IMG/VR virus record: IMGVR_UViG_3300020477_000990
Coordinates: 124,001-188,000 of that record
Direction: 5' to 3' (one strand)
DNA: 64,000 nt
Shown: one piece after another, positions 3,306 to 16,176 of the stretch
Layout of the letters: every line of letters begins with the position of its first letter
Numbering within the stretch: the stretch's first letter is position 1
Notes under the pieces: generated by a model
What the model saw: only the letters and a program-made list of their open reading frames with translations
The model's database searches: none
Told to the model about the DNA's origin: nothing
Position numbers and translations under genes: made by a program

Positions 3306-3414
3306 CCGGGACTAGATCTAGTCATTAGCTCCTGATCTCCAGCTTTAGCTCCGGGACTATATGTTGTGGTGGCCTCGATCTATGCCTCTCATGCGTAGAT
3401 TTATTCCGGGACTA
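3306..3414 (+). repeat. Three CCGGGACTA direct repeats
   Basis: Copies at 3306, 3351, 3406; partial CCGGGAC at 3495. Confidence 0.9.
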
Positions 3415-3445
3415 TATATAGTGGTTTTAATTAGACTAATTTTTA

Positions 3446-3474
3446 TTGACTCATTATCGATAATATGCTATATT
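3446..3474 (+). promoter_or_regulatory. sigma70 promoter with extended -10 inside the non-coding element
   Basis: TTGACT 3446-3451, 17-nt spacer containing palindrome ATTATCGATAAT, TGcTATATT ending 3474. Confidence 0.7.
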
Positions 3475-3645
3475 AAATATACAACATGGGTCGCCCGGGA
3501 CACGTATTCCTTACCGTATGGGGTCGGGCGGTCAAGTCGATCAAGCGTACGATCCGGCGATCAGCGTATGACGAGAAACAATGATGGAGCCCAGAGATAA
3601 TAGTAGCTGTATGACGGGGGACGGTAGGGTGATACAGCTACACCT

Positions 3646-3747
3646 TCAAAGAGGCTCAAAGCACTCAAAGAGCTTCAAAGACACTCAAAGGACTCAAAGG
3701 CGCTCAAAGGGGCTCAAAGGGCCTCAAAGGCGGGGCGAGGTTCAAAG
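3646..3747 (+). repeat. Ten TCAAAG repeats phased at about 10 bp
   Basis: Copies at 3646, 3656, 3665, 3675, 3685, 3694, 3704, 3714, 3724, 3742. Confidence 0.95.
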
Positions 3748-3788
3748 AGGCCAGATGGCCCCTCCGGGGCCTATATTGAGATTTAGTC

Positions 3789-3840
3789 TTGAGATGTTGC
3801 AAAAATACAACACATTTTGAGATGTTGTAGAAATACAACA
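3789..3840 (+). repeat. Two 24-bp direct repeats TTGAGATGTTGyArAAATACAACA, each an internal inverted repeat
   Basis: Copies 3789-3812 and 3817-3840 differ at 2 positions. Confidence 0.9.
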
Positions 3841-4169
3841 GGTGTTGTATAAAAGCCACAAGTTACCGTAACTGCTGTAAACACATTTGGAACACAATTG
3901 GAACAAGATTTCAACACAATTGTTAATAGCTTATTGGCCACAATATGTTGTAGGGTGTGTGATAAACGCGACACAACATCTTGTATGAAAAAAGACTAAT
4001 AATATCAATGGTTTAGCACGGTGAAGCTGTAGCTGTGCTATATGTAGTCAGGACCTGACTAGATATTGTGCCATGGTAAAATGGTCAGAGTTCGGCCCAA
4101 CCTTTGAGTAACAGTCTATTTCTTTCTAAATTTTCTCTGCTCTAGTTAATTTTCGACTGGAGTTAATAT

Positions 4170-4198
4170 TATAATAGCATAGGTTTCTATATTGTCAA
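4170..4198 (-). promoter_or_regulatory. Leftward sigma70 promoter with 12-bp operator, no downstream ORF
   Basis: Minus strand TTGACA-atATAGAAACCTATgc-TATTAT. Confidence 0.7.
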
Positions 4199-4221
4199 GA
4201 GGTTAATTTAAATATTTTTGG

Positions 4222-4249
4222 TTGACACATTGCGTAACCGTGCTACAAT
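4222..4249 (+). promoter_or_regulatory. Early sigma70 promoter
   Basis: TTGACA 4222-4227, 16 nt, TGcTACAAT ending 4249. Confidence 0.75.
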
Positions 4250-4322
4250 AAAGAATGAGCCTGTTGTAATGAATCGATAGGTATACTTAGATGAAGCAGG
4301 CTCATTTAAATAGAAAGGAAAT

Positions 4323-4700
4323 ATGTCAAATATAAGAATAGCTTACTACAGTCACAGCGAAACACCTATATCAACACTTACTAATTGTCCAGGAGATGAT
4401 TTAGTTAAGGTAGCTAGAATGTTAGAAACAACTGCGCCAACGTGGGAAGATGCTAAGAAGTATGTACACTTAACGCAACACACGTTGCAAGAACACTATG
4501 GTGTAGATGGTTATGGTGATCCTTTATGTACTAGAATAAGTGGTGTAAAGAATAAAGAAAACTTAATTGGTTTGTTTATTCATATGAGATCTAAATGGCA
4601 CTTTAGTGATAATGGTATTGATTGGATCCCAACTGAAGAAGAATTTCCAGTCGATTCTACCGAGCCTTATAAAGTTGTTAACGGATTTGTTAACGTTTAA
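4323..4700 (+). CDS. Hypothetical early protein
   Basis: SD AGAAAGGA, promoter upstream, terminator downstream. Confidence 0.8.
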   Translation: MSNIRIAYYSHSETPISTLTNCPGDDLVKVARMLETTAPTWEDAKKYVHLTQHTLQEHYGVDGYGDPLCTRISGVKNKENLIGLFIHMRSKWHFSDNGIDWIPTEEEFPVDSTEPYKVVNGFVNV

Positions 4701-4715
4701 TTTAAATTAAAGAAA

Positions 4716-4752
4716 TAAAAAAGCCCCAATACTTTTAGTAAAGGGGCTTTCT
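4716..4752. terminator. Bidirectional intrinsic terminator
   Basis: A-tract, AAGCCCC/GGGGCTT stem, T-tract, between convergent genes. Confidence 0.8.
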
Positions 4753-4790
4753 CTTGTTTAACACAACGTTACAATTGTACGTAACGTGCT

Positions 4791-5399
4791 CTACGCAACT
4801 TTAGTTGCTGTAAACTTTACTAGTTCCGAGGCACAATGTTGCCAAAAGTCTCCATCCAAGTTAACATCATAATTTACTGTTTCCTCAGCCTGCATTCCCT
4901 GTTCGCTATATTCGAAGTCTAAATACTTCTCTAATAGCTTTCTATTAAAGTTACATTCTTCTTCCATGTACTTTAATAAATTTTCTGTAAACCCATCGTC
5001 CGTATAAATTAAGCCATCGCTTTCTTTACTCGGGTTCCTATTAATTAATGCAGAGGGATCGTCAACTCCATCATACCATGTGCCGTCTTTTCCGCTTCCG
5101 TCATAGTATGCATTACCCGTAAGTCCGCCACTCCAATATATGTCATCAGCATTCATTGTACTCCAATCTTTTTTGTCGTACATTTGTCTGCTGTGTTGCG
5201 CCATTAAAACGAGATTGCTAACTTTTACTCCTTTAACTACTCCCTTACTCCATATACTATCTCCGCTAGTCCAAATACGTTTGTTAACGTTTACATCAAA
5301 TCGTAACGTTTCATCGTCTTTATCGTATTCGTAATTAACGTTAGCATTCTGCAAAAATTTAATGCCTGCTTGTACTTCTGCTAATGTATACTTTGCCAT
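4791..5399 (-). CDS. Hypothetical acidic early protein
   Basis: SD AGAAAGGA; own promoter (TTGACA at 5451-5446). Confidence 0.8.
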   Translation of the reverse strand: MAKYTLAEVQAGIKFLQNANVNYEYDKDDETLRFDVNVNKRIWTSGDSIWSKGVVKGVKVSNLVLMAQHSRQMYDKKDWSTMNADDIYWSGGLTGNAYYDGSGKDGTWYDGVDDPSALINRNPSKESDGLIYTDDGFTENLLKYMEEECNFNRKLLEKYLDFEYSEQGMQAEETVNYDVNLDGDFWQHCASELVKFTATKVA

Positions 5400-5422
5400 T
5401 TGTTTCCTTTCTGTTATTGTTT

Positions 5423-5451
5423 AACTATAGCATATTTTCCTGTTTTGTCAA
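5423..5451 (-). promoter_or_regulatory. Early sigma70 promoter
   Basis: Minus strand TTGACAaaacaggaaaatatgcTATAGT. Confidence 0.7.
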
Positions 5452-5535
5452 GTCTTTATGCTATTAATTTAATGTTAGTAACAAACCTAAAACTATTACT
5501 AATATTATAAATGTTTTTTTATAGTACATAATTTA

Positions 5536-5712
5536 CTATAACATACGTATTGTAACTGTATAGTGTAATGTTGACTGCTTAATTACACTTATATTTTTAC
5601 TAGCTTTTACTATGTCCAATAGCTTTAGCCTTTTAACTTCCTCTTCGTCGTTGTCGTAAATTTTTACTGTAGGTTCGAATAGCTTATCCAAACTTTCTTT
5701 AACTTTTTTCAT
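5536..5712 (-). CDS. Small hypothetical protein (start MKKVKE)
   Basis: SD AAGGAG before ATG at 5712; promoter TTGACA at 5765-5760. Confidence 0.6.
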   Translation of the reverse strand: MKKVKESLDKLFEPTVKIYDNDEEEVKRLKLLDIVKASKNISVIKQSTLHYTVTIRML

Positions 5713-5833
5713 TACTGCTCCTTTTATTACTGTAACTACTGTAACATACATTGCTTGTTTGTCAAGTACTAAGGGGCCGCGTAAGTCATTGAAATCATTA
5801 CATTTTTTTGGCGTGTTTAGACTAAAATAATGG

Positions 5834-5863
5834 TTGACATTATAGGTTTCTATGCTAATATAA
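5834..5863 (+). promoter_or_regulatory. Early sigma70 promoter with 12-bp operator
   Basis: TTGACA 5834-5839; ATAGGTTTCTAT 5842-5853; TGcTAATAT. Confidence 0.75.
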
Positions 5864-5896
5864 TATTAATGTTTAACACTAAACGAAAGGACAAAT

Positions 5897-6508
5897 ATGC
5901 CAAATTGGTGTAATAATAATATAATAATAAAAGGCCCAAAGAAAAAGATAAAGGATCTAGAAGCGGCGGCTAAAGAAGGACAATTTTGTAATTGGTTAGT
6001 TGCTATGCCGAAGGTTTTAGAAGATACAACTGCTGACGGGACTGAAAAACCTAAACTTAAAAAAGCAACAGGTTTTAGTGATTGGTACGATTGGCGAGTT
6101 GCCAATTGGGGAACCAAATGGGATGTAGATGCTTACGAAGGTTCAATAAAAATCAAAGAAGAACTATTAGGCAAAGACAATGGTAAAGCAGAGTTATCAT
6201 TTGGCTTTGATAGTGCTTGGGCACCTCCATTAGAAGCAATAGCAACTTACCTAGAGAAGAACGATGATGTTTCTATGAAACTATGGTATTATGAACCAGG
6301 TTGCGACTTTGGTGGAGTTTGGGAAGACTTTAACGATGATTGTTGGCAAATATCAGAAGTTCAAGATAGTTTTTTAATTAACGATCCTGTAGGTAGAGAG
6401 TTTAACGATTACTTTGGACTATTAGAATCTAGGGAAGAGTGGAGAGCTGATGAGGAAAATGATCCTAAGTCAGTTGCTAAATGGAAGGCAGTTCAAGGTG
6501 CAGAATAA
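5897..6508 (+). CDS. DUF1281/YubB ferredoxin-like domain protein
   Basis: MPNWCNN start, WYDWRVANWGTKWD and FDSAWAPP motifs. Confidence 0.75.
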   Translation: MPNWCNNNIIIKGPKKKIKDLEAAAKEGQFCNWLVAMPKVLEDTTADGTEKPKLKKATGFSDWYDWRVANWGTKWDVDAYEGSIKIKEELLGKDNGKAELSFGFDSAWAPPLEAIATYLEKNDDVSMKLWYYEPGCDFGGVWEDFNDDCWQISEVQDSFLINDPVGREFNDYFGLLESREEWRADEENDPKSVAKWKAVQGAE

Positions 6509-6848
6509 GGTCGCAAACGATAATTTACCTATTGACTATAAAGACTGCGATAGTAATACGGAAGTGATTGTTGATAAGAACGGTCACTTCCTAACGCATT
6601 ATGTATTAGCCGAAAGATTACTGCAAGTTGAGTATGCATCTATAAGAGATCAATTACGCAACGAACCATCAAGCGATACTTTAACATATATTCTTGAAGG
6701 TGGCTTTAGAGGCTTTCACAAATACACAATGGAACAGCAACGAGATGAATGGTTAGATGGTGCAGAAGATAGATGGTATCAGCTGTACGCAGATAAAGAA
6801 CTGCCATGGGAACCATATGAGGAGGATCCGATATGCAAAGTAAAATAA
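6450..6848 (+). CDS. Hypothetical acidic protein (true start possibly a GTG near 6498)
   Basis: ORF in a tightly packed operon; start uncertain. Confidence 0.65.
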   Translation: MRKMILSQLLNGRQFKVQNKVANDNLPIDYKDCDSNTEVIVDKNGHFLTHYVLAERLLQVEYASIRDQLRNEPSSDTLTYILEGGFRGFHKYTMEQQRDEWLDGAEDRWYQLYADKELPWEPYEEDPICKVK

Positions 6849-7015
6849 CAAAAGCACCTTTGATGTTAAAAGGAATAAATGAATCTTTTAATAAAAAAGA
6901 TAAAGAACTTATATCAGAAATGATTTGGGATAAGGTTAGAGAATTGCTTCCTGACTCTCCAGGTATTACTGGTATTAGTTATGAAATCAATGTACAAGTA
7001 CAGGAGGAAGAATAA
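6833..7015 (+). CDS. Small hypothetical protein
   Basis: SD GAGGA; coupled to neighbours. Confidence 0.65.
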   Translation: MQSKITKAPLMLKGINESFNKKDKELISEMIWDKVRELLPDSPGITGISYEINVQVQEEE

Positions 7016-7185
7016 TGGCTAAATGGAAAATCCATGTAGACCTAGATGCCGCTAGGGAAGAAGCAGAATATTTAGAGTCTTTAACAATTGAAGCCGATAA
7101 TGAAGATGAAGCCTTAACAAAAGCAGATCAGATAGTTAAGTCAAATATGTATGGTGGACCTTATTATAATGTGGAGGAGGAGTAA
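7015..7185 (+). CDS. Small acidic protein, DpnD/PcfM-like motif (not in ORF track)
   Basis: MAKWKIHVDLDAAREEAEYLESLTIEADNEDEALTKA..., SD AGGAGG, TAATG coupling both sides. Confidence 0.75.
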   Translation: MAKWKIHVDLDAAREEAEYLESLTIEADNEDEALTKADQIVKSNMYGGPYYNVEEE

Positions 7186-7448
7186 TGGCTAATAAAGATA
7201 AATTTTTGCTGAAGCCCAAAAATTTACTAGATAAATTTTTGCTGGATGATGACTCCGGGGTTAATTTAATGGATTTGTCAGTAGAAGAATTAAAGGATTA
7301 CAAAGAAACAATTATTGAAAAGATTGAAAAATATCTTCCAGAACTTTGTGATGATATAGATGAAGTAATAGCAATAAAGAAAGAAGCCGAAGATAATTGG
7401 GATGGATCAAATTATCCAGCAATCAATCCATTAGGAGAAGATGTATAA
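7185..7448 (+). CDS. Acidic hypothetical protein
   Basis: SD GGAGGAG, TAATG coupling. Confidence 0.75.
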   Translation: MANKDKFLLKPKNLLDKFLLDDDSGVNLMDLSVEELKDYKETIIEKIEKYLPELCDDIDEVIAIKKEAEDNWDGSNYPAINPLGEDV

Positions 7449-7717
7449 TGGCTTGGACTCAAGAAGAAGAAGAGAAGTATTTAAAGTCACCTTATAAGAA
7501 ATACAGTATAGGTATACCTTATACAGTATGGGTCGATGTAGATGCAAAGGATCAAGACGAAGCGGTTGACTTGGCTTGTAATGCTGAATTTAGTGTGAAC
7601 TTATATATTGGACAAAAGCAACATAGAAGAGTTCATGTAATTCCGGACGCAGAATTGCAAGAATATGTTGATCCTATGGTATGGTGTGAGGACGATGGGA
7701 CTTATAAACCTACATAA
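7448..7717 (+). CDS. Acidic protein, DpnD/PcfM-like motif
   Basis: VWVDVDAKDQDEAVDLA; start at TAATG junction 7448. Confidence 0.7.
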   Translation: MAWTQEEEEKYLKSPYKKYSIGIPYTVWVDVDAKDQDEAVDLACNAEFSVNLYIGQKQHRRVHVIPDAELQEYVDPMVWCEDDGTYKPT

Positions 7718-7736
7718 ACATTGGGAAAATTAATGG

Positions 7737-7765
7737 TTGACAACATAGAAATCTATGCTATTGTT
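7737..7765 (+). promoter_or_regulatory. Early sigma70 promoter with 12-bp operator
   Basis: TTGACA 7737-7742; ATAGAAATCTAT 7745-7756; TGcTATTGT. Confidence 0.75.
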
Positions 7766-7787
7766 AATAATAACAAGAAAGGAAAAT

Positions 7788-7991
7788 ATGTTTAAAACAT
7801 TTTTTAATATATTAGCAACACTTTTAATTGCCGTTGGTTTAATTATGATGGCGGGTAGTGCTAACGATTGTGATGGCAAGTGTATGGAAACTGCTAATAC
7901 AATTACAGAGATGCTTATGTATGCAGGCATTGGCTTAACTTTTATGATATGCGGAAGTGCAATTTTAATTTCAAATAAGAGGGAGGCGTAA
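7788..7991 (+). CDS. Two-TM membrane protein with a Cys-pair loop
   Basis: SD GAAAGGA; two hydrophobic helices flanking NDCDGKC. Confidence 0.75.
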   Translation: MFKTFFNILATLLIAVGLIMMAGSANDCDGKCMETANTITEMLMYAGIGLTFMICGSAILISNKREA

Positions 7992-8503
7992 TGTCAACAA
8001 GAAGTTGGGTAGCGGTGCAAAGTGCAAGTCACGATAAAGAAGGCGGCGTATGTCAATTTGTTTATTCGCATTATGACGGATATCCAAGTGGGGTAGGTTT
8101 AACTTTATTACAACACTATAACGCAAAATCAAAAGCAAAACAATTAATAAGCGGCGGAGACATTTCAATTATTGATTGGCATGGGCAAGACATTTTATAT
8201 TATGCAAAGCGAGGCAGTTGGAAAGATCCTAGAGGCGGAGACGATGAGCCGTGGGATCAAGTAAAACCTCGTTGGAAAAACAATAAGCAAAATTTGTTTA
8301 ATGCTTTTAGAAGCGACGAAGGAATGATGATTGCTTATCTTTACATTTATGAAACAGACTTAAAATGGCATTGCTACAAGGTTGATTATGATACAAAAGA
8401 TATTATAGAACTTGAGTTAGACAAAACACATTTATTAAAGTCTAGAAATAGTAATTACGACAACTACATTGAAGACAATGTAGAGATAGGTAAGGTAGCT
8501 TAA
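7991..8503 (+). CDS. Conserved-type phage hypothetical protein (STRS...HYDGYP)
   Basis: MSTRS and YSHYDGYPSGVG motifs typical of phage early proteins. Confidence 0.75.
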   Translation: MSTRSWVAVQSASHDKEGGVCQFVYSHYDGYPSGVGLTLLQHYNAKSKAKQLISGGDISIIDWHGQDILYYAKRGSWKDPRGGDDEPWDQVKPRWKNNKQNLFNAFRSDEGMMIAYLYIYETDLKWHCYKVDYDTKDIIELELDKTHLLKSRNSNYDNYIEDNVEIGKVA

Positions 8504-8685
8504 TGAAAACTTTTAAATGTTTAGATTGCGGAATAGATATTCCTGCGTCAACAGATCATTCTACAGACGAACCTTATATGTTTGTTTGTAATGATTGTAG
8601 AGATGAAATAGGAAATGGTAAGCAATGGGATGCTAATGGCTTACCATATAACTTTACAGACAAATATCATGATGAGGTTGCATAA
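8503..8685 (+). CDS. Zinc-ribbon protein
   Basis: CLDC...CNDC. Confidence 0.7.
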   Translation: MKTFKCLDCGIDIPASTDHSTDEPYMFVCNDCRDEIGNGKQWDANGLPYNFTDKYHDEVA

Positions 8686-8885
8686 TGGAACCGTATAAAA
8701 TTAAATGGTGCGAATCTTGTCAGGAGTCAACAGAACATTTTGACGATAGGCAATATAATACAGAACCTGAGAAATGGAATTGTATGCAATGTATTGATAG
8801 ACACGGTTCTAGCGATGCATTAGATAATGCTGAATATTTAGACGATTTAGATGAGGGCGAAGGTATATTGTACGACGAATATTAA
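8685..8885 (+). CDS. Acidic zinc-ribbon protein
   Basis: CESC...CMQC; 19 of 66 residues D/E. Confidence 0.7.
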   Translation: MEPYKIKWCESCQESTEHFDDRQYNTEPEKWNCMQCIDRHGSSDALDNAEYLDDLDEGEGILYDEY

Positions 8886-8910
8886 GCAAAACTGCGGTTC
8901 ATTTAGGGTC

Positions 8911-8940
8911 TTGACAGAATCCTATATTGTGCTATTATAA
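8911..8940 (+). promoter_or_regulatory. Early sigma70 promoter with operator overlapping -35
   Basis: TTGACA 8911-8916; ACAGAATCCTAT 8914-8925; TGcTATTAT. Confidence 0.75.
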
Positions 8941-8961
8941 TACTATAAAGGAAGGAACATT

Positions 8962-9396
8962 ATGTCAAAAAAAGAATATAGCAAAGATAAGCCACACGCA
9001 GATATCGGCAAATCAAAATATAGAGTTAGACAACATTACAACGCATGGGTTGAATATGATGTTGTAGCGGATTCAAAAGAAGAAGCGGAAAGTGCCGTTT
9101 TAGAACACGGTGGTATTGAAAAAATAGAATGGCAAGAAGGTTATTACAAAGATGAACCTGTTGAAGTTTATTGCAACGATTATAATTGGGATAGCGATGC
9201 AGATAGAGAATATGAAAAGCATCCGTTCGTTAGAGAACAAAGAATAAAAAAGGTTGCAGAATGTATTCCATACGAAGATAGCGATAGTATAGATTATTCA
9301 GATCCAGATTGGTCTACAGATGAATATGAATGGAAAAAAGAAGAGATGGATACAGAAGCTGGTTATAACATTATAAAAGATAAGGCGGCGTTTTAA
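8962..9396 (+). CDS. Acidic protein, DpnD/PcfM-like motif
   Basis: YDVVADSKEEAESAV; SD GGAAGGA. Confidence 0.75.
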   Translation: MSKKEYSKDKPHADIGKSKYRVRQHYNAWVEYDVVADSKEEAESAVLEHGGIEKIEWQEGYYKDEPVEVYCNDYNWDSDADREYEKHPFVREQRIKKVAECIPYEDSDSIDYSDPDWSTDEYEWKKEEMDTEAGYNIIKDKAAF

Positions 9397-10046
9397 TGGA
9401 TAGAATGATTAGAAATATTGCAATAGCATTAATGGCTTTAATAATCGTTCTGTTCATTTTCGATCAGAAGGCTCATGCGGTAACATTAACTACACAAGCA
9501 AAACATATTTTAAAAAGTGAGTTAGCTAATCATGAAATTAATAATCCAGAACATATAAAGCAGGTAAAGTGTTTAGCAGAAAACATTTACTTTGAAGCAA
9601 GAGCTGAAAGTGATGTAGGTAAAGCGGCTGTTGGTAATGTAACCAAGAACAGAGTATTAGATAGTAGATGGCCATCAACTTATTGTGAAGTAGTGCATGA
9701 AGGACCTGTTAGAGAGTCTTGGAAGACTAGAGGTAAAGATGTTGCTCAAGAAGATAGAGTATTTTGGCCCATCAAACATAGATGTCAATTTAGTTGGTAT
9801 TGCGATGGTAAGAAAGATGTTATATGGGCTAACTATGAAAAGACAGGACAAACAATTGAAGGCAATGCAAGAGCTTGGAGAGATTCAATCGAACTTGCAA
9901 TTTATATTACTGGATATGGTAAAATGATTATAGACGATAATACACACGGAGCCGTGTTTTATTATAATCATAATTTAGTATATCCTAACTGGGCACCAAC
10001 AAAAGAATATATTGGGGTAACAGGTAACCATACATTTATGAAATAA
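9396..10046 (+). CDS. Cell wall hydrolase, SleB/Hydrolase_2 family, with N-terminal signal anchor
   Basis: CLAENIYFEARAE...AVGNVTKNRV...CQFSWYCDG...GNHTF. Confidence 0.9.
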   Translation: MDRMIRNIAIALMALIIVLFIFDQKAHAVTLTTQAKHILKSELANHEINNPEHIKQVKCLAENIYFEARAESDVGKAAVGNVTKNRVLDSRWPSTYCEVVHEGPVRESWKTRGKDVAQEDRVFWPIKHRCQFSWYCDGKKDVIWANYEKTGQTIEGNARAWRDSIELAIYITGYGKMIIDDNTHGAVFYYNHNLVYPNWAPTKEYIGVTGNHTFMK

Positions 10047-10128
10047 TGGACGCGATAATATTATTTGTTATACCACCACTGTTAGGTTGGATAGTTTATT
10101 TGATAATAGAATTAAGGAGGAACGAAAA

Positions 10129-10206
10129 ATGGAAACATACGAAAATATTCCACATGATGTTGATATTATATTACAACTTCAAATGGAACAAGAATGGGGA
10201 AAATGA
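10129..10206 (+). CDS. 25-aa peptide METYENIPHDVDIILQLQMEQEWGK
   Basis: Strong SD AAGGAGG; ATGA coupling to next ORF. Confidence 0.5.
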   Translation: METYENIPHDVDIILQLQMEQEWGK

Positions 10207-10319
10207 AAAAAGAAAATAAAGAACTGCTAAAAGAGTTTTTACATTTCTGGCCACTTTCAATAGTAGTACCAGGAATGCTAATACTAATTCTGTTAGCTAA
10301 TGTCTTTAATTGGGCATAA
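10203..10319 (+). CDS. 38-aa single-TM peptide
   Basis: MKKENKELLKEFLHFWPLSIVVPGMLILILLANVFNWA. Confidence 0.55.
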   Translation: MKKENKELLKEFLHFWPLSIVVPGMLILILLANVFNWA

Positions 10320-10339
10320 GCTGGCCAGAAACTTTTCGG

Positions 10340-10367
10340 TTGACAAATGGCCGATCTGTGTTACAAT
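10340..10367 (+). promoter_or_regulatory. Early sigma70 promoter
   Basis: TTGACA 10340-10345; TACAAT 10362-10367. Confidence 0.7.
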
Positions 10368-10403
10368 AAGGAAATAGTCAATTCGAATATCAGGAGGTAT
10401 TAA

Positions 10404-10643
10404 ATGGCTGATTCAAATACGAAGTACACTTTTGTACTAGAAGCAATAAGAGCCGATGGGAAGAAAGTAATGAGATTTACTAACAAACCAGATAACAGAG
10501 CTCAGGTTTTAATCAACAATGGTTATAAACCAAAAGATGAACACTCTAAAGTAGAGTTCATTAAAATGGATGCACCAATGACGAAGCATGAATACGCGGA
10601 ATCATTAAAAAGTGCTCCGGCTGTAGCTGAAGCAACAGCATAA
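10404..10643 (+). CDS. Small hypothetical protein, monocistronic
   Basis: SD AGGAGG; own promoter and terminator. Confidence 0.8.
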   Translation: MADSNTKYTFVLEAIRADGKKVMRFTNKPDNRAQVLINNGYKPKDEHSKVEFIKMDAPMTKHEYAESLKSAPAVAEATA

Positions 10644-10655
10644 ATTTAATTTAAG

Positions 10656-10684
10656 AAGCCCCTGAAATATGGGGCTTTTTTTAT
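10656..10684 (+). terminator. Intrinsic terminator
   Basis: AAGCCCC-tgaaatat-GGGGCTT then T-tract. Confidence 0.85.
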
Positions 10685-10686
10685 GG

Positions 10687-10715
10687 TTGACAATATAGAA
10701 ATCTATGCTACTATA
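10687..10715 (+). promoter_or_regulatory. Early sigma70 promoter with 12-bp operator
   Basis: TTGACA 10687-10692; ATAGAAATCTAT 10695-10706; TGcTACTAT. Confidence 0.75.
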
Positions 10716-10735
10716 TATTAATGAAAGGGAACAAT

Positions 10736-11014
10736 ATGTCAAAAGAAATGAAGAAGGGCGATAAGCCATACGGACATCCATTACCATTCGATTGTGTAGT
10801 GTTAGAAGATCCTGAAGTAATAGCGAATCCATATAGTGGTGAGAAGATAAAACTTCAACCAGATGCGGTTGCCGTTTATGATTCAATTAAAGGTGCTGAA
10901 TTAATGGCACAAGGAATTGATGATGGAGGCCATCCTTTATGGAGACAAGTTAGAGCTGGATTGGATTGGTTTAGAAAACATTATGCAAAAGAATATATGG
11001 TGTTATTAGACTAA
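10736..11014 (+). CDS. Hypothetical phage protein (NPYSGE...AVYDSIKG...YMVLLD type)
   Basis: SD AAAGGGA before ATG 10736. Confidence 0.75.
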   Translation: MSKEMKKGDKPYGHPLPFDCVVLEDPEVIANPYSGEKIKLQPDAVAVYDSIKGAELMAQGIDDGGHPLWRQVRAGLDWFRKHYAKEYMVLLD

Positions 11015-11015
11015 T

Positions 11016-11255
11016 ATGAGATACAACGATTATTCAGATATCAGAAAAGGGGACCGAGTTTATTATCACAATAGACAAGGTCAACTACACTATGGCAAGG
11101 CCGTTTTATACGGCCCTGCAGGGTGGGTATTAGATTGTGCTCATGGATCACAGGTTGTAGGACATAATAAAAACTATGCAGGTCATAAGCATAGCAAAGG
11201 TAGACGAGAAGACGATCATTTTGGGAAGTGGCTTAATAGCCCATCAAGTATATGA
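11016..11255 (+). CDS. Small SH3-like beta protein
   Basis: IRKGDRVYY...GKAVL pattern. Confidence 0.6.
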   Translation: MRYNDYSDIRKGDRVYYHNRQGQLHYGKAVLYGPAGWVLDCAHGSQVVGHNKNYAGHKHSKGRREDDHFGKWLNSPSSI

Positions 11256-11359
11256 AAGAAACAATAATTTGGACAATTCTAGGTATAGTATCTGTAGTCT
11301 ATATATTATGGACAACAGAAACCCTATGTATTATGGGTTTAACTTGCTGGGGATTTTAG
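11252..11359 (+). CDS. 35-aa single-TM peptide
   Basis: MKETIIWTILGIVSVVYILWTTETLCIMGLTCWGF; ATGA overlap with previous stop. Confidence 0.55.
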   Translation: MKETIIWTILGIVSVVYILWTTETLCIMGLTCWGF

Positions 11360-11362
11360 GGG

Positions 11363-11393
11363 TTGACAGAATCCTATAATATGCTATTATAAT
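11363..11393 (+). promoter_or_regulatory. Early sigma70 promoter with operator overlapping -35
   Basis: TTGACA 11363-11368; ACAGAATCCTAT 11366-11377; TGcTATTATAAT. Confidence 0.75.
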
Positions 11394-11414
11394 AGTATGG
11401 AAGGAACAAAAACA

Positions 11415-12497
11415 ATGATGCAAAAAATTAAACCCCTATTATGGATATTCTTTGGAGTATATTTCTTTGTATGGGGACTAGCAGGATGTAATAATGATGC
11501 TCGTGCAAATGAGAAGCATGACTTATTAAAAACGAATAACGGAATTAGTAGTAAAGATACTACAATTAAAGGTTGGAAGTTTAGAGCAAATAAACATTTA
11601 AAGAAACATATTAAAAAGGGAGACCTTTTATATACATATGATGTAGTTTATGCTAAAGATGGATTTCCAGTTAGATGGGGAGACACATCACAAAAATTTG
11701 AATTAAGAGGTTTACAATGTACATCAGGAGGTTCTGGGGATTGTAAAAGAGAGAATGGTGATTCAAGTTCTAGAATAGAAACTCCAGTTAAAGATTCTTA
11801 CCATATGGGAAACAATTCCGAGTATTGGATTACTTGGTCTATATATGTTCCTGAAGATTATGTATTAATTCATAAAAAGTCTGGGTTAGGTCAATTCCAC
11901 TCTAACCAAGGACCTATGCCATCACAATGGGAATTTAAATTATATAATGATTATAAGCAAAGTGGTTTCCAATTATGGAATTCTGTATCAGGGGATATAG
12001 AAAAAAGATATGATGCTTGTTTTGGTTCAAGCAATTCTTTATCTAAGATGTCTGACAAGAGTGCTAAATTTCATTGGTGTGAAAAACAATATTGGAAATA
12101 TAATTTAATGTCTCTAGAAGAATTTTATTCACATAGAGGTAAATGGATTGACTTTATTGTAAATGTTAAATGGAGTAATAAAGATAAAGGACACTTTAAA
12201 CTTTGGATTAATGGTAAACAAGTAGTTAACCATCAAGGTAAAACAATGCACGATTCAAAACAATATGGATCAAAGTTTAAAGCAACATTCACTTATGGTA
12301 TGTACAACGATAATAAAAAAGGTATATGGGATGTCACAAAAGAAAGATTTGAACAGCCACTAACAATATATTGGGATGAAGTTTGGAGAATGAAGTCTTG
12401 TAAGAAACTAGACCTTGAAAGACTTGGATACTCATGTGATGCTTTAGACAATGGTGGTAAAGAACATCCAGACCTAATCCATGATAAGAGAAGTTAA
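11415..12497 (+). CDS. Polysaccharide lyase-like (heparin lyase I / beta-jelly-roll) lipoprotein
   Basis: Lipobox LAGC; SRIE, EYWITWSIYVP, GQFH, KWIDFIVNVKWS...GHFKLWING, YGMY, IYWDEV motifs. Confidence 0.75.
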   Translation: MMQKIKPLLWIFFGVYFFVWGLAGCNNDARANEKHDLLKTNNGISSKDTTIKGWKFRANKHLKKHIKKGDLLYTYDVVYAKDGFPVRWGDTSQKFELRGLQCTSGGSGDCKRENGDSSSRIETPVKDSYHMGNNSEYWITWSIYVPEDYVLIHKKSGLGQFHSNQGPMPSQWEFKLYNDYKQSGFQLWNSVSGDIEKRYDACFGSSNSLSKMSDKSAKFHWCEKQYWKYNLMSLEEFYSHRGKWIDFIVNVKWSNKDKGHFKLWINGKQVVNHQGKTMHDSKQYGSKFKATFTYGMYNDNKKGIWDVTKERFEQPLTIYWDEVWRMKSCKKLDLERLGYSCDALDNGGKEHPDLIHDKRS

Positions 12498-12520
12498 TTA
12501 GTATGTGTATTAAAATAAGA

Positions 12521-12750
12521 ATTGGGTGCAAGAAGCCAATAGTCGACAGACTTAAAATGTATCAGAGAGGTTTAGCCGATGCGGTGAGTTTACTCTTTAA
12601 ACAAACTCCATTGCGAAGTAGCAACGACCATGAACCACCGACTGTCTTGCTTGGGTGTATAAGAGCTGGGAAGCCAGGACACTTCGCAAACTTAGGTCGT
12701 TCACTAACTAGTCTTAGGAGCCGGGACTTCTTAAACAAAACAGGCTCCAT
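12521..12750 (+). ncRNA. Candidate structured ncRNA or leader with pseudoknot
   Basis: GC-rich intergenic island; TTGCGAAGT/ACTTCGCAA (9 bp) crossed by AACGACC/GGTCGTT (7 bp); hairpins GAGTTT/AAACTC and GGAGCC/GGCTCC both with TTAAAC in the loop. Confidence 0.55.
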
Positions 12751-12768
12751 ATTACAAGGAGAGGCAAT

Positions 12769-13002
12769 ATGAAAAAAATATTACCAATAATTGCAATAGG
12801 CTTTTTATTAAGTGCCTGTAGTGCAACAACTGGTGCTATTACTAAAAAGGATGTCACGACGCTAGGCGGATGTGTTGCTGGTGGTGTTGCTGGATCTCAA
12901 GTAGGTAGTGGTAGTGGTAAGAAATGGGCGATCATCACAGGGACGGTTCTGGGATGTCACGGTGGCTCAATTCTAGGTAAGAAAATCGATCCTGACAACT
13001 AA
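12769..13002 (+). CDS. Glycine-zipper 2TM lipoprotein
   Basis: Lipobox LSAC; GGCVAGGVAGSQVGSGSG glycine zipper; SD AGGAGAGG. Confidence 0.8.
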   Translation: MKKILPIIAIGFLLSACSATTGAITKKDVTTLGGCVAGGVAGSQVGSGSGKKWAIITGTVLGCHGGSILGKKIDPDN

Positions 13003-13006
13003 AAGG

Positions 13007-13035
13007 TTGACAGATCACAGAAGTATGTTATATTA
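13007..13035 (+). promoter_or_regulatory. Early sigma70 promoter
   Basis: TTGACA 13007-13012; TGtTATATT. Confidence 0.7.
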
Positions 13036-13067
13036 AAATATAAACAAAATAAACAAGAAGGGAACAA

Positions 13068-14126
13068 ATGTCAACATACATTAAAATCGTAGACGGAACA
13101 TACGGAAAGAAGGCCGGGAAACCTTTAAGTGTCAAGGGCACAATCTTTCCTATGCTAAAAGCATTTCAAACAGATAAACAGGGTGGCTTTGTCACAGTCG
13201 ATGCAATGAAGGTTCCAAACTTTCCTGCAAGGACTATTAAAGTAAGATGTGAATCACCTAAGTCATATGAGTTTGTTAATGAATCAGATTTCGATAAAAG
13301 TATTAGACACATTGATGCTAATGTGCCAGGCGAAACTGAATCAGAAGCAATTGATAGAATAAGAGAAAGATTCGATATTCTAGATACTATGACGGAAGCA
13401 ACTATGGAAGGAACGGTAAGAGCACTTATTGTTAGTGGCCCTCCAGGAGTTGGTAAATCATACGGTGTTGAAGAGAAGTTAAATGAAGCAAACATCTTCG
13501 ATAAAATATCTGAAAGCAAACCTAAATGGGAAGTTGTCCGTGGGGCAATGAGTGCTATTGGTTTGTATCAAAAGTTGTTTAAGTTTAGTAATAGAGGGCA
13601 CATATTAGTTTTAGATGATTGTGACTCTATCCTATTCGATGACGTTGCACTTAACATACTTAAGGCGGCGTTAGATAGTAGTAAGAAAAGATACATATCA
13701 TGGAATACAGAATCAAGAGTATTGGCCAACGAAGGTGTGCCAGATAGGTTTGAATTCCAAGGTAGTGTTATCCTAATTACAAACATTAAGTTCAACTATG
13801 TTAAGTCCAAGAAGTTGCAAGATCACTTACAAGCGGTAATGTCAAGATGCCATTACTTAGACTTAACAATGGATAGTGTGCGTGATAGGATGTTGCGTTG
13901 CAAACAGATAATAGCAGATGGTGAAATGTTATCCCCATATAAATTTAGTGCTGAACAAGAGCAAAAACTAATAGACTTTATATGGGAGCATAGAGATTCA
14001 CTAAATGAGATTAGTTTAAGAATGGTGACTAAGATTGCTGACTTAATGAAGATGAGTAATGATTGGGAGAAATTAGCCAGAGCAACTTGTATGAAGCGAG
14101 CAATGGCTCAGAATAGAGTTGCTTAA
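13068..14126 (+). CDS. P-loop AAA-type ATPase
   Basis: Walker A GPPGVGKS, Walker B LVLDDCD, sensor ILITN, AVMSRC. Confidence 0.85.
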   Translation: MSTYIKIVDGTYGKKAGKPLSVKGTIFPMLKAFQTDKQGGFVTVDAMKVPNFPARTIKVRCESPKSYEFVNESDFDKSIRHIDANVPGETESEAIDRIRERFDILDTMTEATMEGTVRALIVSGPPGVGKSYGVEEKLNEANIFDKISESKPKWEVVRGAMSAIGLYQKLFKFSNRGHILVLDDCDSILFDDVALNILKAALDSSKKRYISWNTESRVLANEGVPDRFEFQGSVILITNIKFNYVKSKKLQDHLQAVMSRCHYLDLTMDSVRDRMLRCKQIIADGEMLSPYKFSAEQEQKLIDFIWEHRDSLNEISLRMVTKIADLMKMSNDWEKLARATCMKRAMAQNRVA

Positions 14127-14138
14127 ACTACACAGAAT

Positions 14139-14200
14139 TGGTGCTTGTTCTGTTCCTTTCTAAAGCACCATGGGGGTAATTACTTAGGTTTTTGCCCCCA
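14139..14200 (+). other. Twin hairpin; first loop is complementary to the phage early RBS
   Basis: TGGTGCTT/AAGCACCA with loop GTTCTGTTCCTTTCTA; TGGGGGTAA/TTGCCCCCA. Confidence 0.55.
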
Positions 14201-14232
14201 AAACTTTCCATAAAATAAGAGAAAATAAGGGG

Positions 14233-14261
14233 TTGACATAATAGAATCCTATGTTATATTA
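14233..14261 (+). promoter_or_regulatory. Early sigma70 promoter with 12-bp operator
   Basis: TTGACA 14233-14238; ATAGAATCCTAT 14241-14252; TGtTATATT. Confidence 0.75.
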
Positions 14262-14291
14262 ATACTATAAACACTTAACAAAAGGAACAAA

Positions 14292-14642
14292 ATGAATAAA
14301 GTTCGTGGAATAGTCAACTCAGAAGATCCTAATATTCGTATACACAATGAAGGTATATCAGCGGCCAAGAAAGCGGCTAAAGAATATATGGATAAACACG
14401 GTGAGCCAATGTACTGTGGCTTTGCTTGGGTTAATATTAAACCTGGTACTAGCCAATTTGCTAGATCATTAAAGAAGCATAACCTTGTAGATACTACAAG
14501 TTACTATGGTGGTTATGATATATGGGATCCAGCAGGGTTCAATACACAATCAATGGATATAAAAGAAGTAGGTGCAGAGGCTTATGCTAATGTACTTGAG
14601 TCTTATGGTATTAATGCATCAATGATGTCAAGAGCTGATTAA
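14292..14642 (+). CDS. Conserved-type phage hypothetical protein (CGFAWV motif)
   Basis: CGFAWVNIKP...QSMDIKE motif; SD AAAGGA. Confidence 0.75.
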   Translation: MNKVRGIVNSEDPNIRIHNEGISAAKKAAKEYMDKHGEPMYCGFAWVNIKPGTSQFARSLKKHNLVDTTSYYGGYDIWDPAGFNTQSMDIKEVGAEAYANVLESYGINASMMSRAD

Positions 14643-14652
14643 GGAGGGCTAT

Positions 14653-14940
14653 ATGAGTAAACATAAGGTAATAGATCTAATTAAGCAAGTTAAGTCACTA
14701 ACTACTAGAGATGACTTAATTGCTATATCTAATGCGGCACACACTAGATTAGATTGGGTTAATAGATGTAAGGCACAGGACTTTACTAGAGGTGATAGAG
14801 TATCATTTACATCTAGTAGATCAGGCCGTACAATGAAGGGTACTGTAAGGAAGGTTAATATCAAGTATGTTATAGTAGACATAGATGGTACTAGCATGAG
14901 CTACAGAGTACCTGGTTCATATTTGAAATTAGTAGCATAA
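14653..14940 (+). CDS. SH3/KOW-like small protein
   Basis: FTRGDRVSF...GTVRKVNIKYVIV; SD AAGGAGG. Confidence 0.7.
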   Translation: MSKHKVIDLIKQVKSLTTRDDLIAISNAAHTRLDWVNRCKAQDFTRGDRVSFTSSRSGRTMKGTVRKVNIKYVIVDIDGTSMSYRVPGSYLKLVA

Positions 14941-14980
14941 GAGCTATACAGTAGTACTGTTGTATAGAGCTACAATACTA

Positions 14981-15004
14981 AAGGCCCTACGGGGCCTTTT
15001 TTTA
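14981..15004 (+). terminator. Intrinsic terminator closing the early module
   Basis: AGGCCC-tacg-GGGCCT then long T-tract. Confidence 0.85.
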
Positions 15005-16165: not shown

Positions 16166-16176
16166 TAAATACTATT

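What the first reader, a model, noticed from the sequence alone, without database searches (positions are those of the whole stretch)
4170..14940. Promoter-dense early module bracketed by two non-coding elements: possible long terminal repeat / host-takeover region
Twelve TTGACA promoters in about 10 kb (4198r, 4222, 5451r, 5765r, 5834, 7737, 8911, 10340, 10687, 11363, 13007, 14233), strong AAGGA(A/G) RBSs and mostly tiny unknown genes. Known: SPO1 and T5 carry host-takeover genes under strong sigma70-type promoters in terminal repeats. Inference: a ~12 kb direct terminal repeat with ends in the two non-coding blocks, enriched for anti-defence and takeover proteins.
Basis: partly seen in the sequence, partly recalled or inferred. 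Interest (0 to 1): 0.7.

Follow-up and report, generated by a model that had tools for sequence, protein, structure and literature searches.

The report
Early-gene terminal repeat of a marine jumbo phage
A 12-13 kb stretch of an uncultivated 328 kb marine jumbo phage carries twelve near-perfect host-type promoters driving mostly tiny unknown genes, sits between two conserved repeat-rich non-coding blocks and is sequenced about twice as deeply as the rest of the genome, so it is most likely a long terminal repeat holding the phage's early genes, as in phages T5, SPO1 and PA5oct.

Summary
The composite motif TTGACA-N13-TG-N-TAnnnT occurs 13 times in the window (0.09 expected) and 25 times in the 328,149-bp genome, with 12 of them between 4171 and 14260 (P about 3e-12). 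Eleven are followed 21-73 nt later by an AAGGA-type RBS and a start codon. They drive 26 ORFs (16 are at most 100 aa; 17 of JGI's 25 called genes match no family).

The genome is a Tara Oceans contig circularised by a 75-bp overlap, so a long terminal repeat would be collapsed.
- Two SPAdes assemblies give module/baseline coverage of 2.05 and 2.04.
- Three Logan runs give 1.5-1.8.
- The left step lies at about 3.4-3.8 kb and the right edge at about 15.1-16.7 kb.

GC content, strain sharing and internal duplication do not explain the excess. Both edges fall in conserved non-coding blocks full of phased short repeats. The closest relative, PA5oct (terminase 56% identical), has a proven 39-kb early-gene terminal repeat.

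Not shown: physical ends, early timing, and any anti-defence function. The module also encodes envelope-directed proteins (secreted hydrolase, polysaccharide lyase, lipoprotein) and an AAA ATPase.

Verdict: a new member of a known kind.

The parts
2733..4170 (.). Left non-coding block (about 45% GC). It holds phased repeat arrays: 3 x 21 bp (GACCCCGCTGT core) at 3215-3271, 3 x CCGGGACTA units at 3305-3425, about 9 x 10-bp CTCAAAGG units at 3646-3740, 28-bp units each holding an inverted repeat at 3789-3859, and 3 x 11 bp at 3880-3922. The left depth step falls here (3.4-3.8 kb).
   Evidence: CTCAAAGG occurs 5 times here out of 7 in the genome; arrays conserved in a strain only 87% identical, with a copy-number change in the decamer array; depth 42.7 -> 55.6 -> 70.4 in X1; no Rfam family; no match in deposited phages.
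4060..4198 (-). Promoter P4198r (4171-4198) pointing outward into the left block, with no RBS or ORF downstream. Window 4083-4198, which takes in the promoter and the first ~80 nt of its transcript, is almost invariant between divergent strains: a probable small non-coding RNA or cis element.
   Evidence: no exceptional fold (z = -0.9).
4222..4700 (+). Promoter P4222 (4222-4249), a 73-nt leader with a hairpin (about 4253-4308, deleted in one natural variant), and an orphan gene of 125 aa (4323-4700).
   Evidence: (variant skipping 4256-4312).
4791..5765 (-). Two leftward single-gene units: P5451r with a 202-aa acidic orphan (4791-5399), and P5765r with a 58-aa protein (5536-5712).
5834..7717 (+). 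P5834 operon of six genes. The first (5897-6508, 203 aa) is a DUF1281_C / YubB-like ferredoxin-like-domain protein; the other five are small acidic orphans.
7737..8885 (+). P7737 operon: a 67-aa protein with two TM segments (7788-7991), a 170-aa conserved phage protein (phrog_1987, 'T4-like GC 66'), and two small acidic proteins.
8911..10319 (+). P8911 operon: a very acidic 144-aa protein, a 216-aa SleB-type cell-wall hydrolase with a signal peptide (9396-10046), then two tiny TM proteins (57 and 41 aa). The arrangement resembles a lysis cassette.
   Evidence: (27% identical to the PA5oct 'endolysin').
10340..10680 (+). P10340, a 79-aa orphan (10404-10643), and an intrinsic terminator (10653-10680).
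10687..11255 (+). P10687 operon of two small orphans (10736-11014 and 11016-11255).
11363..13002 (+). P11363 operon: a polysaccharide lyase (PF14099, 11415-12497, N-terminal TM or signal segment), an 89-aa basic protein, and a 77-aa lipobox lipoprotein with a glycine-zipper domain (12769-13002).
   Evidence: a divergent lyase allele in another strain.
13007..14126 (+). P13007 and a 352-aa AAA ATPase (phrog_1250), 47% identical to the protein encoded at PA5oct 248735-249889 (locus tag PQE65_gp126) and widespread in T4-like and jumbo phages.
14233..14999 (+). P14233 operon (116-aa phrog_22149 protein and a 95-aa protein) ending at a strong intrinsic terminator (14980-14999). It gave the deepest RNA contig among the stretches laid.
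   Evidence: (RNA contig 14296-14938, depth 36.9).
14941..16176 (.). Right non-coding block. It holds 6 of the genome's 11 GCAMATACAA sites, plus related units, at 15973-16160. The stretch 15395-16260 is 100% identical in a strain that diverges just to its left. The right edge of the raised depth lies in or just beyond this block.
   Evidence: no Rfam family; no match in deposited phages.
3600..16400 (.). Interval of about 1.5-2.05x sequencing depth: the proposed terminal repeat of roughly 11.8-13 kb, about 3.5-3.8% of the virion DNA.

Best explanation
The window lies in a 328-kb uncultivated marine jumbo myovirus related to Pseudomonas phage PA5oct (Arenbergviridae). Window ~3.6 to ~16 kb is most likely a long direct terminal repeat of about 12-13 kb, present at both ends of the packaged DNA and collapsed to one copy in the circularised assembly. 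It carries the phage's densest set of promoters read by the host sigma70-type RNA polymerase. Twelve near-consensus extended -10 promoter cassettes split the region into eleven short transcription units with strong ribosome-binding sites, plus one outward non-coding transcript. Whichever end enters the cell first, these genes would be expressed at once and strongly by the unmodified host polymerase. Their products are mostly small, often acidic orphan proteins, with a few envelope-directed proteins and an AAA ATPase. The two conserved repeat-rich non-coding blocks at the edges are inferred to be the cis-acting sites that define or use the repeat ends (terminase recognition and cutting, end duplication, or DNA-entry control). 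Shown here: the promoter cluster, the operon layout, the roughly doubled depth, the absence of alternative junctions, and the conservation of the blocks. Inferred: terminal position, early timing, and the role of the blocks.
For: Promoters: 13 composite sites in the window against 0.09 expected. Twelve of the 25 in the genome lie in 3% of its length. Eleven are followed 21-73 nt later by an RBS and a start codon. Depth, SPAdes assemblies: in ERZ6778701 the module-only contig has cov 42.18 against 20.57 at the terminase locus, a ratio of 2.05; in ERZ8580415 the values are 15.25 against 7.46, a ratio of 2.04; in ERZ841987 a contig that is 39% module has cov 37.9 against 28.6 for the flank. Depth, Logan runs: X1 gives about 70 against 42.7 and 46.9, and X2 and X3 give about 1.6-1.8x. 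Confounders: depth is uncorrelated with GC (r = 0.21, 0.01, -0.07) while the inside/outside factor is 1.46-1.80. Flanks are less divergent between samples than the module, and in X1 the summed depth of all contigs at least 95% alike stays at 43-48 in the flanks, so strain sharing does not explain the excess. Long contigs cross both edges without an alternative junction, which excludes an internal duplication. Clade: the assembly is circular through a 75-bp overlap. The nearest terminase is PA5oct's at 56% identity, and that phage has a 39,080-bp repeat found by double coverage, rich in early genes, and depends on host RNAP with TTGAC/TATAAT promoters. Blocks: both edge blocks are repeat-rich and conserved.
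Against: Depth comes from contig k-mer means, not reads. The three Logan runs give 1.5-1.8x rather than 2x. The right edge looks graded (15.1-16.7 kb), and one short contig inside the module has 2.9x the baseline. No read-start pile-ups or long reads were available, so no physical end has been seen. Expression timing is unknown; the same-sample metatranscriptome holds the module and a structural stretch about equally. A secreted hydrolase followed by small membrane proteins looks like a lysis cassette, which is normally late. The only two genes with PA5oct homologues lie outside PA5oct's repeat.
Confidence: 0.65

Rival explanations
1. Headful (pac-type) packaging with limited permutation. Packaging starts at a fixed site in the left block and runs rightward, and the terminal redundancy of the first headfuls covers the module. 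This would give a sharp left step, a plateau below 2x and a fuzzy right edge. The module is still an early or first-entering region, but the ends are not exact.
For: The left step is sharp (42.7 to 70 within about 400 bp), while depth declines gradually on the right in X2 and X3, and the ratios in the three Logan runs are 1.5-1.8.
Against: Two SPAdes assemblies give almost exactly 2.0. The nearest terminase belongs to a phage reported to have a long direct terminal repeat. A processive headful series should also raise depth beyond 16.7 kb, which is not evident: the X1 22-kb contig fits a baseline of about 43 once the module part is subtracted.
Confidence: 0.13
2. An internal early-gene module that is not a terminal repeat. 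The extra depth would come from the population, for example a co-occurring relative, satellite or defective genome that shares only this module.
For: These are metagenomes with visible strain variants, and depth inside the module is not perfectly uniform (60.3 against 42.2 in ERZ6778701).
Against: The ratio is similar in five samples or assemblies. Flanks are more conserved than the module. In X1 no extra contigs at least 95% alike make up the flank deficit, and the module is carried by single contigs without mismatches. No alternative junctions appear at either edge in long contigs.
Confidence: 0.12
3. Local over-replication: the repeat-rich blocks are replication origins, and the module is origin-proximal DNA over-represented in replicating intracellular genomes.
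For: Iteron-like phased repeats lie in both blocks. At least one sample (X1, paired with metatranscriptome X19) holds phage RNA, which suggests infected cells were captured.
Against: Origin-proximal excess gives a smooth gradient, not a flat 9.5-kb plateau with a step inside 400 bp. There are no DnaA boxes. A ratio of exactly 2.0 in two assemblies would be a coincidence.
Confidence: 0.05
4. The promoter cluster is a chance or compositional artefact in AT-rich DNA.
For: The bare hexamer TTGACA is not enriched in the window, and the generic sigma70 scan is barely above shuffles (66 against 59).
Against: The composite motif occurs 13 times against 0.09 expected. Its placement is fixed 21-73 nt before an RBS and start codon. 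The two promoters present in a strain only 87% identical are conserved.
Confidence: 0.01

Closest known systems
Pseudomonas phage PA5oct (Arenbergviridae, Wroclawvirus): 39,080-bp long terminal repeat with early genes (PMC7318152; record NC_071039)
   Same: It is the closest sequenced relative (terminase 56%, baseplate wedge about 43%, AAA ATPase 47% identical). It is a jumbo myovirus that depends on host RNA polymerase, with TTGAC / TATAAT(A) promoters. Its long repeat was detected by double coverage, is filled with tiny same-strand genes and ncRNAs, and is highly transcribed early.
   Different: The repeat here is about three times shorter (about 12-13 kb against 39 kb). No gene of this module has a homologue in PA5oct's repeat, and the two shared genes lie outside it in PA5oct. 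The genome comes from uncultivated marine samples with an unknown host. Termini and timing have not been measured.
Bacillus phage SPO1: host-takeover module in the 13.2-kb terminal redundancy (Stewart et al. 1998, cited in PMC6873191)
   Same: The architecture is almost the same: a 12-13 kb terminal region with about 26 mostly small genes in about a dozen short operons, each with a strong host-sigma early promoter and a strong RBS (gene layout).
   Different: There is no sequence homology (best tblastn E = 0.22 against the SPO1 repeat). The virus family and presumably the host phylum differ. SPO1's operons converge from both ends, whereas here nearly all run one way. The host-shutoff functions shown for SPO1 are untested here.
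Escherichia phage T5: 10.2-kb terminal repeat (first-step-transfer DNA) with pre-early genes and the untranslated 'injection stop signal' repeat region (bioRxiv 10.1101/866236; record NC_005859)
   Same: A terminal repeat enters first and carries sigma70-dependent pre-early genes. A non-coding block of 1.0-1.7 kb full of direct repeats (including nine tandem copies of one unit), inverted repeats and palindromes sits at the inner boundary of the repeat and is far better conserved than the neighbouring genes. The same pattern is seen here.
   Different: There is no homology to dmp, A1 or A2 (best tblastn E = 0.023) and there are no DnaA boxes in either block. Two-step DNA transfer is unknown for this clade. 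Here a second repeat-rich block also marks the outer (left) edge.
Phage T4 early promoters (own knowledge: sigma70-dependent early promoters conserved beyond the two hexamers)
   Same: Near-consensus -35, extended -10 and conserved flanking bases are reused as cassettes in front of many small early genes. The phage is distantly T4-related.
   Different: T4 is circularly permuted with no fixed repeat, and its early promoters are scattered rather than concentrated in one 10-kb block.

Membership tests
Long direct terminal repeat (T5 / SPO1 / PA5oct type) | The region is present twice per packaged genome, seen as about 2x read depth with sharp edges | tested here: met
   Ratios of 2.05 and 2.04 in two SPAdes assemblies and 1.5-1.8 in three Logan runs. 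The left step is at 3.4-3.8 kb and the right edge at 15.1-16.7 kb. GC bias and strain sharing are excluded as causes. Caveat: this is contig-level k-mer depth, and the right edge is not sharp.
Long direct terminal repeat (T5 / SPO1 / PA5oct type) | Fixed physical DNA ends at the repeat boundaries (read-start pile-ups, long-read ends or restriction mapping) | not testable with these tools
   The runs are held only as contigs, which carry no read starts.
Long direct terminal repeat (T5 / SPO1 / PA5oct type) | No novel junction: the repeat is contiguous with unique DNA on both sides in the circular map | tested here: met
   Contigs of 5-175 kb from several assemblies cross each edge colinearly with the reference.
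Long direct terminal repeat (T5 / SPO1 / PA5oct type) | Terminase lineage associated with long-repeat packaging | tested here: inconclusive
   The best hit is the PA5oct group at 56% identity, and PA5oct has a long repeat. No terminase phylogeny with typed packaging classes was built.
Early / host-takeover gene module | Strong promoters for the unmodified host RNA polymerase in front of short operons with strong RBSs | tested here: met
Early / host-takeover gene module | Transcription in the first minutes of infection, followed by shut-off | not testable with these tools
   Only bulk metatranscriptomes exist. They show that RNA from several units is present but give no timing.
Early / host-takeover gene module | Products that inhibit host functions or defences | not tested
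   There are only hints: many small acidic orphans and a DUF1281/YubB-like protein. No family in the libraries used is annotated as anti-defence or host shutoff.
SPO1 host-takeover module (homology) | Homologues of SPO1 gp37-gp60 | tested here: not met
   tblastn of all 26 module proteins against the SPO1 terminal region: best E = 0.22.
T5 first-step-transfer region (homology and iss) | Homologues of dmp, A1 and A2, and an iss region with ordered DnaA boxes | tested here: not met
   No protein hit better than E = 0.023. There are no DnaA boxes in either block. Only the general character matches: an untranslated, repeat-rich, conserved block at the repeat edge.
PA5oct long terminal repeat (homology) | Shared gene content with PA5oct positions 1-39,080 | tested here: not met
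   No ORF of this genome hits PA5oct 1-45,000 or 261,842-286,783 at E < 1e-3, apart from one 23-residue match over a tRNA gene. The hydrolase and the ATPase hit PA5oct at 249-255 kb, outside the repeat.

The most novel reading that the evidence does not exclude
The two conserved, repeat-rich untranslated blocks are not only packaging signals. They could act like T5's injection-stop region, so that this marine jumbo phage delivers its 340-kb DNA in two steps: the ~12-kb repeat enters first, its promoter cassettes fire, and entry of the rest depends on the products. The invariant outward transcript from P4198r could be a terminus-proximal regulatory RNA. Staged DNA entry has so far been established only for T5-like siphoviruses, so this would extend it to jumbo myoviruses.
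Probability: 0.1. Interest if true: 0.7.

Novelty: new member of a known kind. Interest (0 to 1): 0.42.

Why it matters
It shows that the genome ends and the probable early-gene set of an uncultivated 328-kb ocean phage can be inferred from public metagenome assemblies alone. The 'direct terminal repeat' label attached to such contigs (here a 75-bp assembly overlap) can hide a real repeat of 12-13 kb elsewhere in the contig. The true virion DNA would be about 340-341 kb with defined ends, which matters for completeness estimates, for packaging-type assignment and for any attempt to clone or reboot such genomes. The region also supplies a compact list of about 26 strongly expressed, mostly orphan genes and twelve portable strong promoter cassettes from a clade whose early biology is known only from PA5oct. 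It adds a third unrelated lineage, after T5 and SPO1, in which the layout 'terminal repeat with a dozen host-polymerase promoters and small genes' has arisen, with conserved repeat-rich untranslated blocks at the repeat edges.

Tried and rejected
- **Second copy in the contig:** none found. This is uninformative, because the contig is circularised by a 75-bp overlap.
- **GC bias as the cause of the depth step:** rejected. Depth does not correlate with GC.
- **Strain sharing as the cause:** rejected as the main cause. Flanks are more conserved than the module, and there are no compensating variant contigs in X1.
- **Internal or tandem duplication:** rejected. Long contigs cross both edges.
- **Known RNA families in 2.5-17.5 kb:** only one sub-threshold hit.
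- **Similarity of the two blocks to each other or to deposited phages:** none.
- **Close relatives in IMG/VR through the two boundary genes:** none for the 125-aa protein; only hits of 51% identity or less, scattered over diverse phages, for the 116-aa protein. Comparative mapping of ends was therefore impossible.
- **Synteny of the flanks with PA5oct's ends:** none.
- **T4-type late motif TATAAATA:** too rare to be informative (29 in the genome).
- **Fold of the P4198r transcript:** not more stable than shuffles.
- **DnaA boxes:** none in either block.
- **Protein-atlas look-ups of three larger unknowns:** one DUF1281/YubB-like protein, one conserved phage protein of unknown function, and one with no hit.
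- **Contig ends in other assemblies:** scattered (window about 2160, 2778, 5613, 6041, 7956, 9609, 10926, 11384, 12738, 13617), not at one site, so they do not mark termini.
- **Extra coverage look-ups:** two gave no SPAdes contig names.
- **Not used:** structure prediction and complex prediction, because no claim in this report depends on them.

Full report
**What the window is.** The window is bases 124,001-188,000 of a single 328,149-bp contig. The contig comes from a Tara Oceans marine metagenome, JGI 3300020477, contig Ga0211585_10000017. Its two ends share an exact 75-bp overlap and nothing more. That is the mark of a circularised assembly, and IMG/VR's label 'direct terminal repeats' rests on this overlap. 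The phage is a jumbo myovirus. Its baseplate wedge protein, AAA ATPase and large terminase find their best matches (43-56% identity) in Pseudomonas phage PA5oct and its kin (Arenbergviridae), followed by Atu_ph07, SCTP-2 and the Rak2/121Q group. There is no nucleotide-level match to any deposited phage. The same genome, at 99-100% identity, is present in at least 18 DNA runs of marine and seawater metagenomes and in metatranscriptomes.

**Checking the observation.** The bare hexamer TTGACA is not over-represented in the window (51 found, 56.6 expected), and a generic sigma70 scan is barely above shuffles.
- All twelve read TTGACA, a spacer of exactly 16 nt whose last three bases are TG-N, then TAnnnT. 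This is a consensus -35 with an extended -10.
- The composite motif occurs 13 times in the window against 0.09 expected.
- It occurs 25 times in the whole genome, and 12 of those lie between 4171 and 14260, which is 3% of the genome (P = 2.6e-12).
- A relaxed version gives 56 sites genome-wide (about 20 expected), with 15 in the module and none between 15 and 20 kb.
- The cassettes also share bases around the core: GG before the -35, and ATAG...CTAT or CTATA in the spacer. Several are recognisably duplicated, both within the module and elsewhere in the genome.

Eleven of the twelve are followed 21-73 nt after the -10 hexamer by a purine-rich RBS and a start codon. For three genes this corrects the longest-ORF start:
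- 5536-5712 rather than 5536-5751;
- 7788-7991 rather than 7755-7991;
- 11415-12497 rather than 11397-12497.

The twelfth promoter, P4198r, faces outward and has no ORF downstream. Two strong intrinsic terminators close units at 10653-10680 and 14980-14999.

**Gene content.** There are 26 ORFs, 24 of them on the + strand. The median length is 89 aa and 16 are at most 100 aa. Seventeen of JGI's 25 called genes match no Pfam or PHROG family. The exceptions are:
- a DUF1281_C / YubB-like protein (5897-6508);
- a conserved phage protein of unknown function (7991-8503; phrog_1987);
- a SleB-type cell-wall hydrolase with a signal peptide (9396-10046), followed by two tiny membrane proteins;
- a polysaccharide lyase with an N-terminal hydrophobic segment (11415-12497);
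- a lipobox lipoprotein with a glycine-zipper domain (12769-13002);
- an AAA ATPase of a family found in more than 1,300 phage records (13068-14126);
- a phrog_22149 protein (14292-14642).

Many of the small proteins are strongly acidic. Only the hydrolase and the ATPase have PA5oct homologues. So 'mostly tiny unknown genes' is right. 'Enriched for anti-defence and takeover proteins' is neither supported nor contradicted: the annotatable part points as much to the cell envelope as to host takeover.

**The two non-coding blocks.** The left block is really 2733-4322 (1.6 kb, about 45% GC in a 30% GC genome). The right block is 14941-16176. Neither matches an Rfam family or any deposited phage, and the two do not resemble each other. 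Both are packed with short phased repeats.
- Left block: three 21-bp units; three CCGGGACTA units; about nine 10-bp units ending in CTCAAAGG at 3646-3740 (5 of the genome's 7 copies of that 8-mer); 28-bp units that each contain an inverted repeat; and three 11-bp units.
- Right block: 6 of the genome's 11 GCAMATACAA sites within 190 bp (15973-16160).

In a strain only 87% identical over this region, all the left-block arrays survive (the decamer array with one unit fewer). Both divergent promoters survive too, and 4083-4198 is virtually invariant. In a strain that diverges by 3% around the right block, every difference lies left of about 15,395, and 15,395-16,260 is identical. These are constrained cis-acting or RNA-coding elements, while the coding module between them contains the local hot spots of variation.

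**Testing the terminal-repeat inference.** Because the assembly is circular, a long terminal repeat would be collapsed into one copy, so only depth can reveal it.

Logan contigs:

| Run | Left flank | Inside the module | Right side |
|---|---|---|---|
| X1 (probable source sample) | 42.7 (to 3425); 55.6 for the 411-nt contig 3396-3806 | 70.4, 69.9, 71.9, 67.4, 73.0 (3777-13283) | 46.9, the mean of a 22-kb contig starting at 13254 |
| X2 | 9-14 | 16-26 | 17.3 (14977-15294) and 16.4 (15688-16328), then 14.3 falling to 10.1 from 16.7 kb |
| X3 | 25-38 | 47-77 | 51 (16666-16937), then 28-38 |

The X1 right-side mean of 46.9 is what results if the first ~2.9 kb of that contig are at 70 and the rest at 43.

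SPAdes assemblies carry coverage in their contig names:

| Assembly | Module contig (window coordinates) | Comparison contig | Ratio |
|---|---|---|---|
| ERZ6778701 | 5613-13617, cov 42.18 | 15.6-kb contig at the terminase locus, 100 kb away, cov 20.57 | 2.05 |
| ERZ8580415 | 12612-16155, cov 15.25 | 17479-24272, cov 7.46 | 2.04 |
| ERZ841987 | 11384-21858 (39% module), cov 37.9 | left flank, cov 28.6 | about 1.8 implied |

**Confounders.**
- GC content. Depth does not correlate with GC across contig pieces (r = 0.21, 0.01, -0.07), while being inside the module multiplies depth 1.46-1.80-fold.
- A module shared by several strains. Between samples the flanks differ by 0-0.2% and the module has spots of 1-4%. 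In X1 the summed depth of all contigs at least 95% alike stays at 43-48 in the flanks. One caveat: the compared contigs were retrieved by exact identity of five proteins, three in the module and two in the flanks.
- An internal duplication. Contigs of 5-175 kb from several assemblies run colinearly through both edges, so there is no second junction.

What remains is a sequence present about twice per genome without any novel junction, which is what terminal redundancy gives. Interpolation puts the left edge at 3.4-3.8 kb, over the CTCAAAGG array. The right edge is at 15.1-16.7 kb, in or just past the right block. That makes a repeat of about 11.8-13 kb and virion DNA of about 340-341 kb.

The ratios below 2 in the Logan runs have two possible explanations. 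The samples may mix packaged DNA (two copies) with replicating DNA (one copy per unit); X1 has a paired metatranscriptome containing phage RNA. Alternatively, packaging may be headful with an imprecise right end, and I keep that as the main rival.

**Context from relatives and analogues.**
- PA5oct is the nearest characterised relative. Its 39,080-bp terminal repeat was identified by double coverage and holds 105 mostly tiny genes, many highly transcribed at 5 min. It depends on host RNA polymerase and has 32 TTGAC/TATAAT(A) promoters and four ncRNAs (PMC7318152; record annotation). No gene of our module has a homologue in that repeat, as expected for fast-evolving early genes.
- SPO1's terminal region carries a 26-gene host-takeover module of small early genes with strong promoters and RBSs (PMC6873191; layout).
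- T5's 10.2-kb repeat carries pre-early genes. [quoted passage not shown]

The resemblance to both classical systems is architectural only. No module protein hits the T5 or SPO1 repeats (best E = 0.023), and the blocks have no DnaA boxes.

**Mechanism proposed.**
- Shown: a block of twelve consensus extended -10 promoters with strong RBSs, organised as eleven short units plus one outward non-coding unit. The block coincides with an interval of roughly doubled depth, bounded by conserved repeat-rich non-coding DNA.
- Inferred: the interval is a direct terminal repeat, so one copy enters the cell first whichever end leads. The unmodified host polymerase transcribes it immediately. The products (small acidic orphans, a YubB-like protein, an ATPase and envelope-directed proteins) act on the host early. 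The repeat arrays are binding sites for the packaging or end-processing machinery, or possibly for control of DNA entry.
- Evidence on expression: RNA contigs from a matched metatranscriptome cover several units, with the deepest over 14296-14938. One metatranscriptome held 15% of the module's sampled words and is not listed for a structural stretch. Timing cannot be read from such data.
- The hydrolase followed by two small TM proteins looks like a lysis cassette and sits oddly in an early module. It may be transcribed early and used late, as is known (from my own knowledge) for T4 lysozyme, or the module may not be purely early.

**Verdict.** Its key prediction, about 2x depth between 3.6 and 16 kb, was met. 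The physical termini, the early timing and the anti-defence content remain untested. This is a new member of a known kind: a long terminal repeat carrying early genes, as in PA5oct, XacN1, T5 and SPO1. It is of moderate interest, mainly as a clean example recovered from metagenomes alone and for the conserved repeat-rich blocks at both repeat edges.

Noticed in passing
window 17429-17827 (+), and genome about 122.0-122.3 kb (about 1.7-2.0 kb left of the window start): The phage encodes ribosomal protein L7/L12 (PF16320 + PF00542) just right of the module, and ribosomal protein L31 (PF01197) just left of the window. Ribosomal proteins in marine phages are known, but two in one genome flanking the early module is notable.
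   Followed up: no
window 18622-24611 and 57682-59088; genome about 225 kb: There are several radical SAM/SPASM genes, a SufE-like gene, a SET-domain protein (19439-19759, minus strand), a nitroreductase (overlapping the window start, about window -260 to 431) and a Tn7 TnsA-like N-domain protein near the terminase. This is an unusual auxiliary gene set.
   Followed up: no
genome 3393, 40445, 275347, 278355 (window -120607, -83555, 151347, 154355): Four of the strict promoters outside the module have an ATG 6 nt after the -10 hexamer and no RBS (a fifth, at window 148433, has one 10 nt after). This suggests leaderless mRNAs, unlike the module's promoters, which have 21-73-nt leaders with strong RBSs.
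   Followed up: partly
window 4083-4198 (-): The outward promoter P4198r and the first ~80 nt it would transcribe are almost 100% identical in a strain that is only 87% identical over the region, and no ORF follows. This is a candidate small RNA or cis element at the inferred genome end.
   Followed up: partly
window 4256-4312: A natural variant in run X3 replaces 55 nt, the hairpin in the leader of the first gene, with 6 nt. The leader structure is therefore dispensable or variable.
   Followed up: no
window 10589-12503 (locus L119): One Tara scaffold carries a strongly divergent allele of this stretch (75% identity over 10589-11015, and a 337-aa lyase in place of the 360-aa one), while the rest is 99.8% identical. 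This suggests allele replacement inside the module.
   Followed up: no
contig ends (genome 1-75 and 328075-328149): The 'direct terminal repeats' class given to this record rests on a 75-bp assembly overlap. The real repeat suggested by depth lies 128 kb into the contig, so such labels do not locate the true ends.
   Followed up: yes
window 38297-50257 (+): A single ORF of 3,986 aa follows the 1,316-aa baseplate wedge protein.
   Followed up: no
locus L144 (GCA_002433125.1, contig DJHN01000074.1): A 12-kb piece of this phage sits in a metagenome-assembled genome deposited at NCBI. The bin's taxonomy might hint at the host, or it may simply be a binning error.
   Followed up: no
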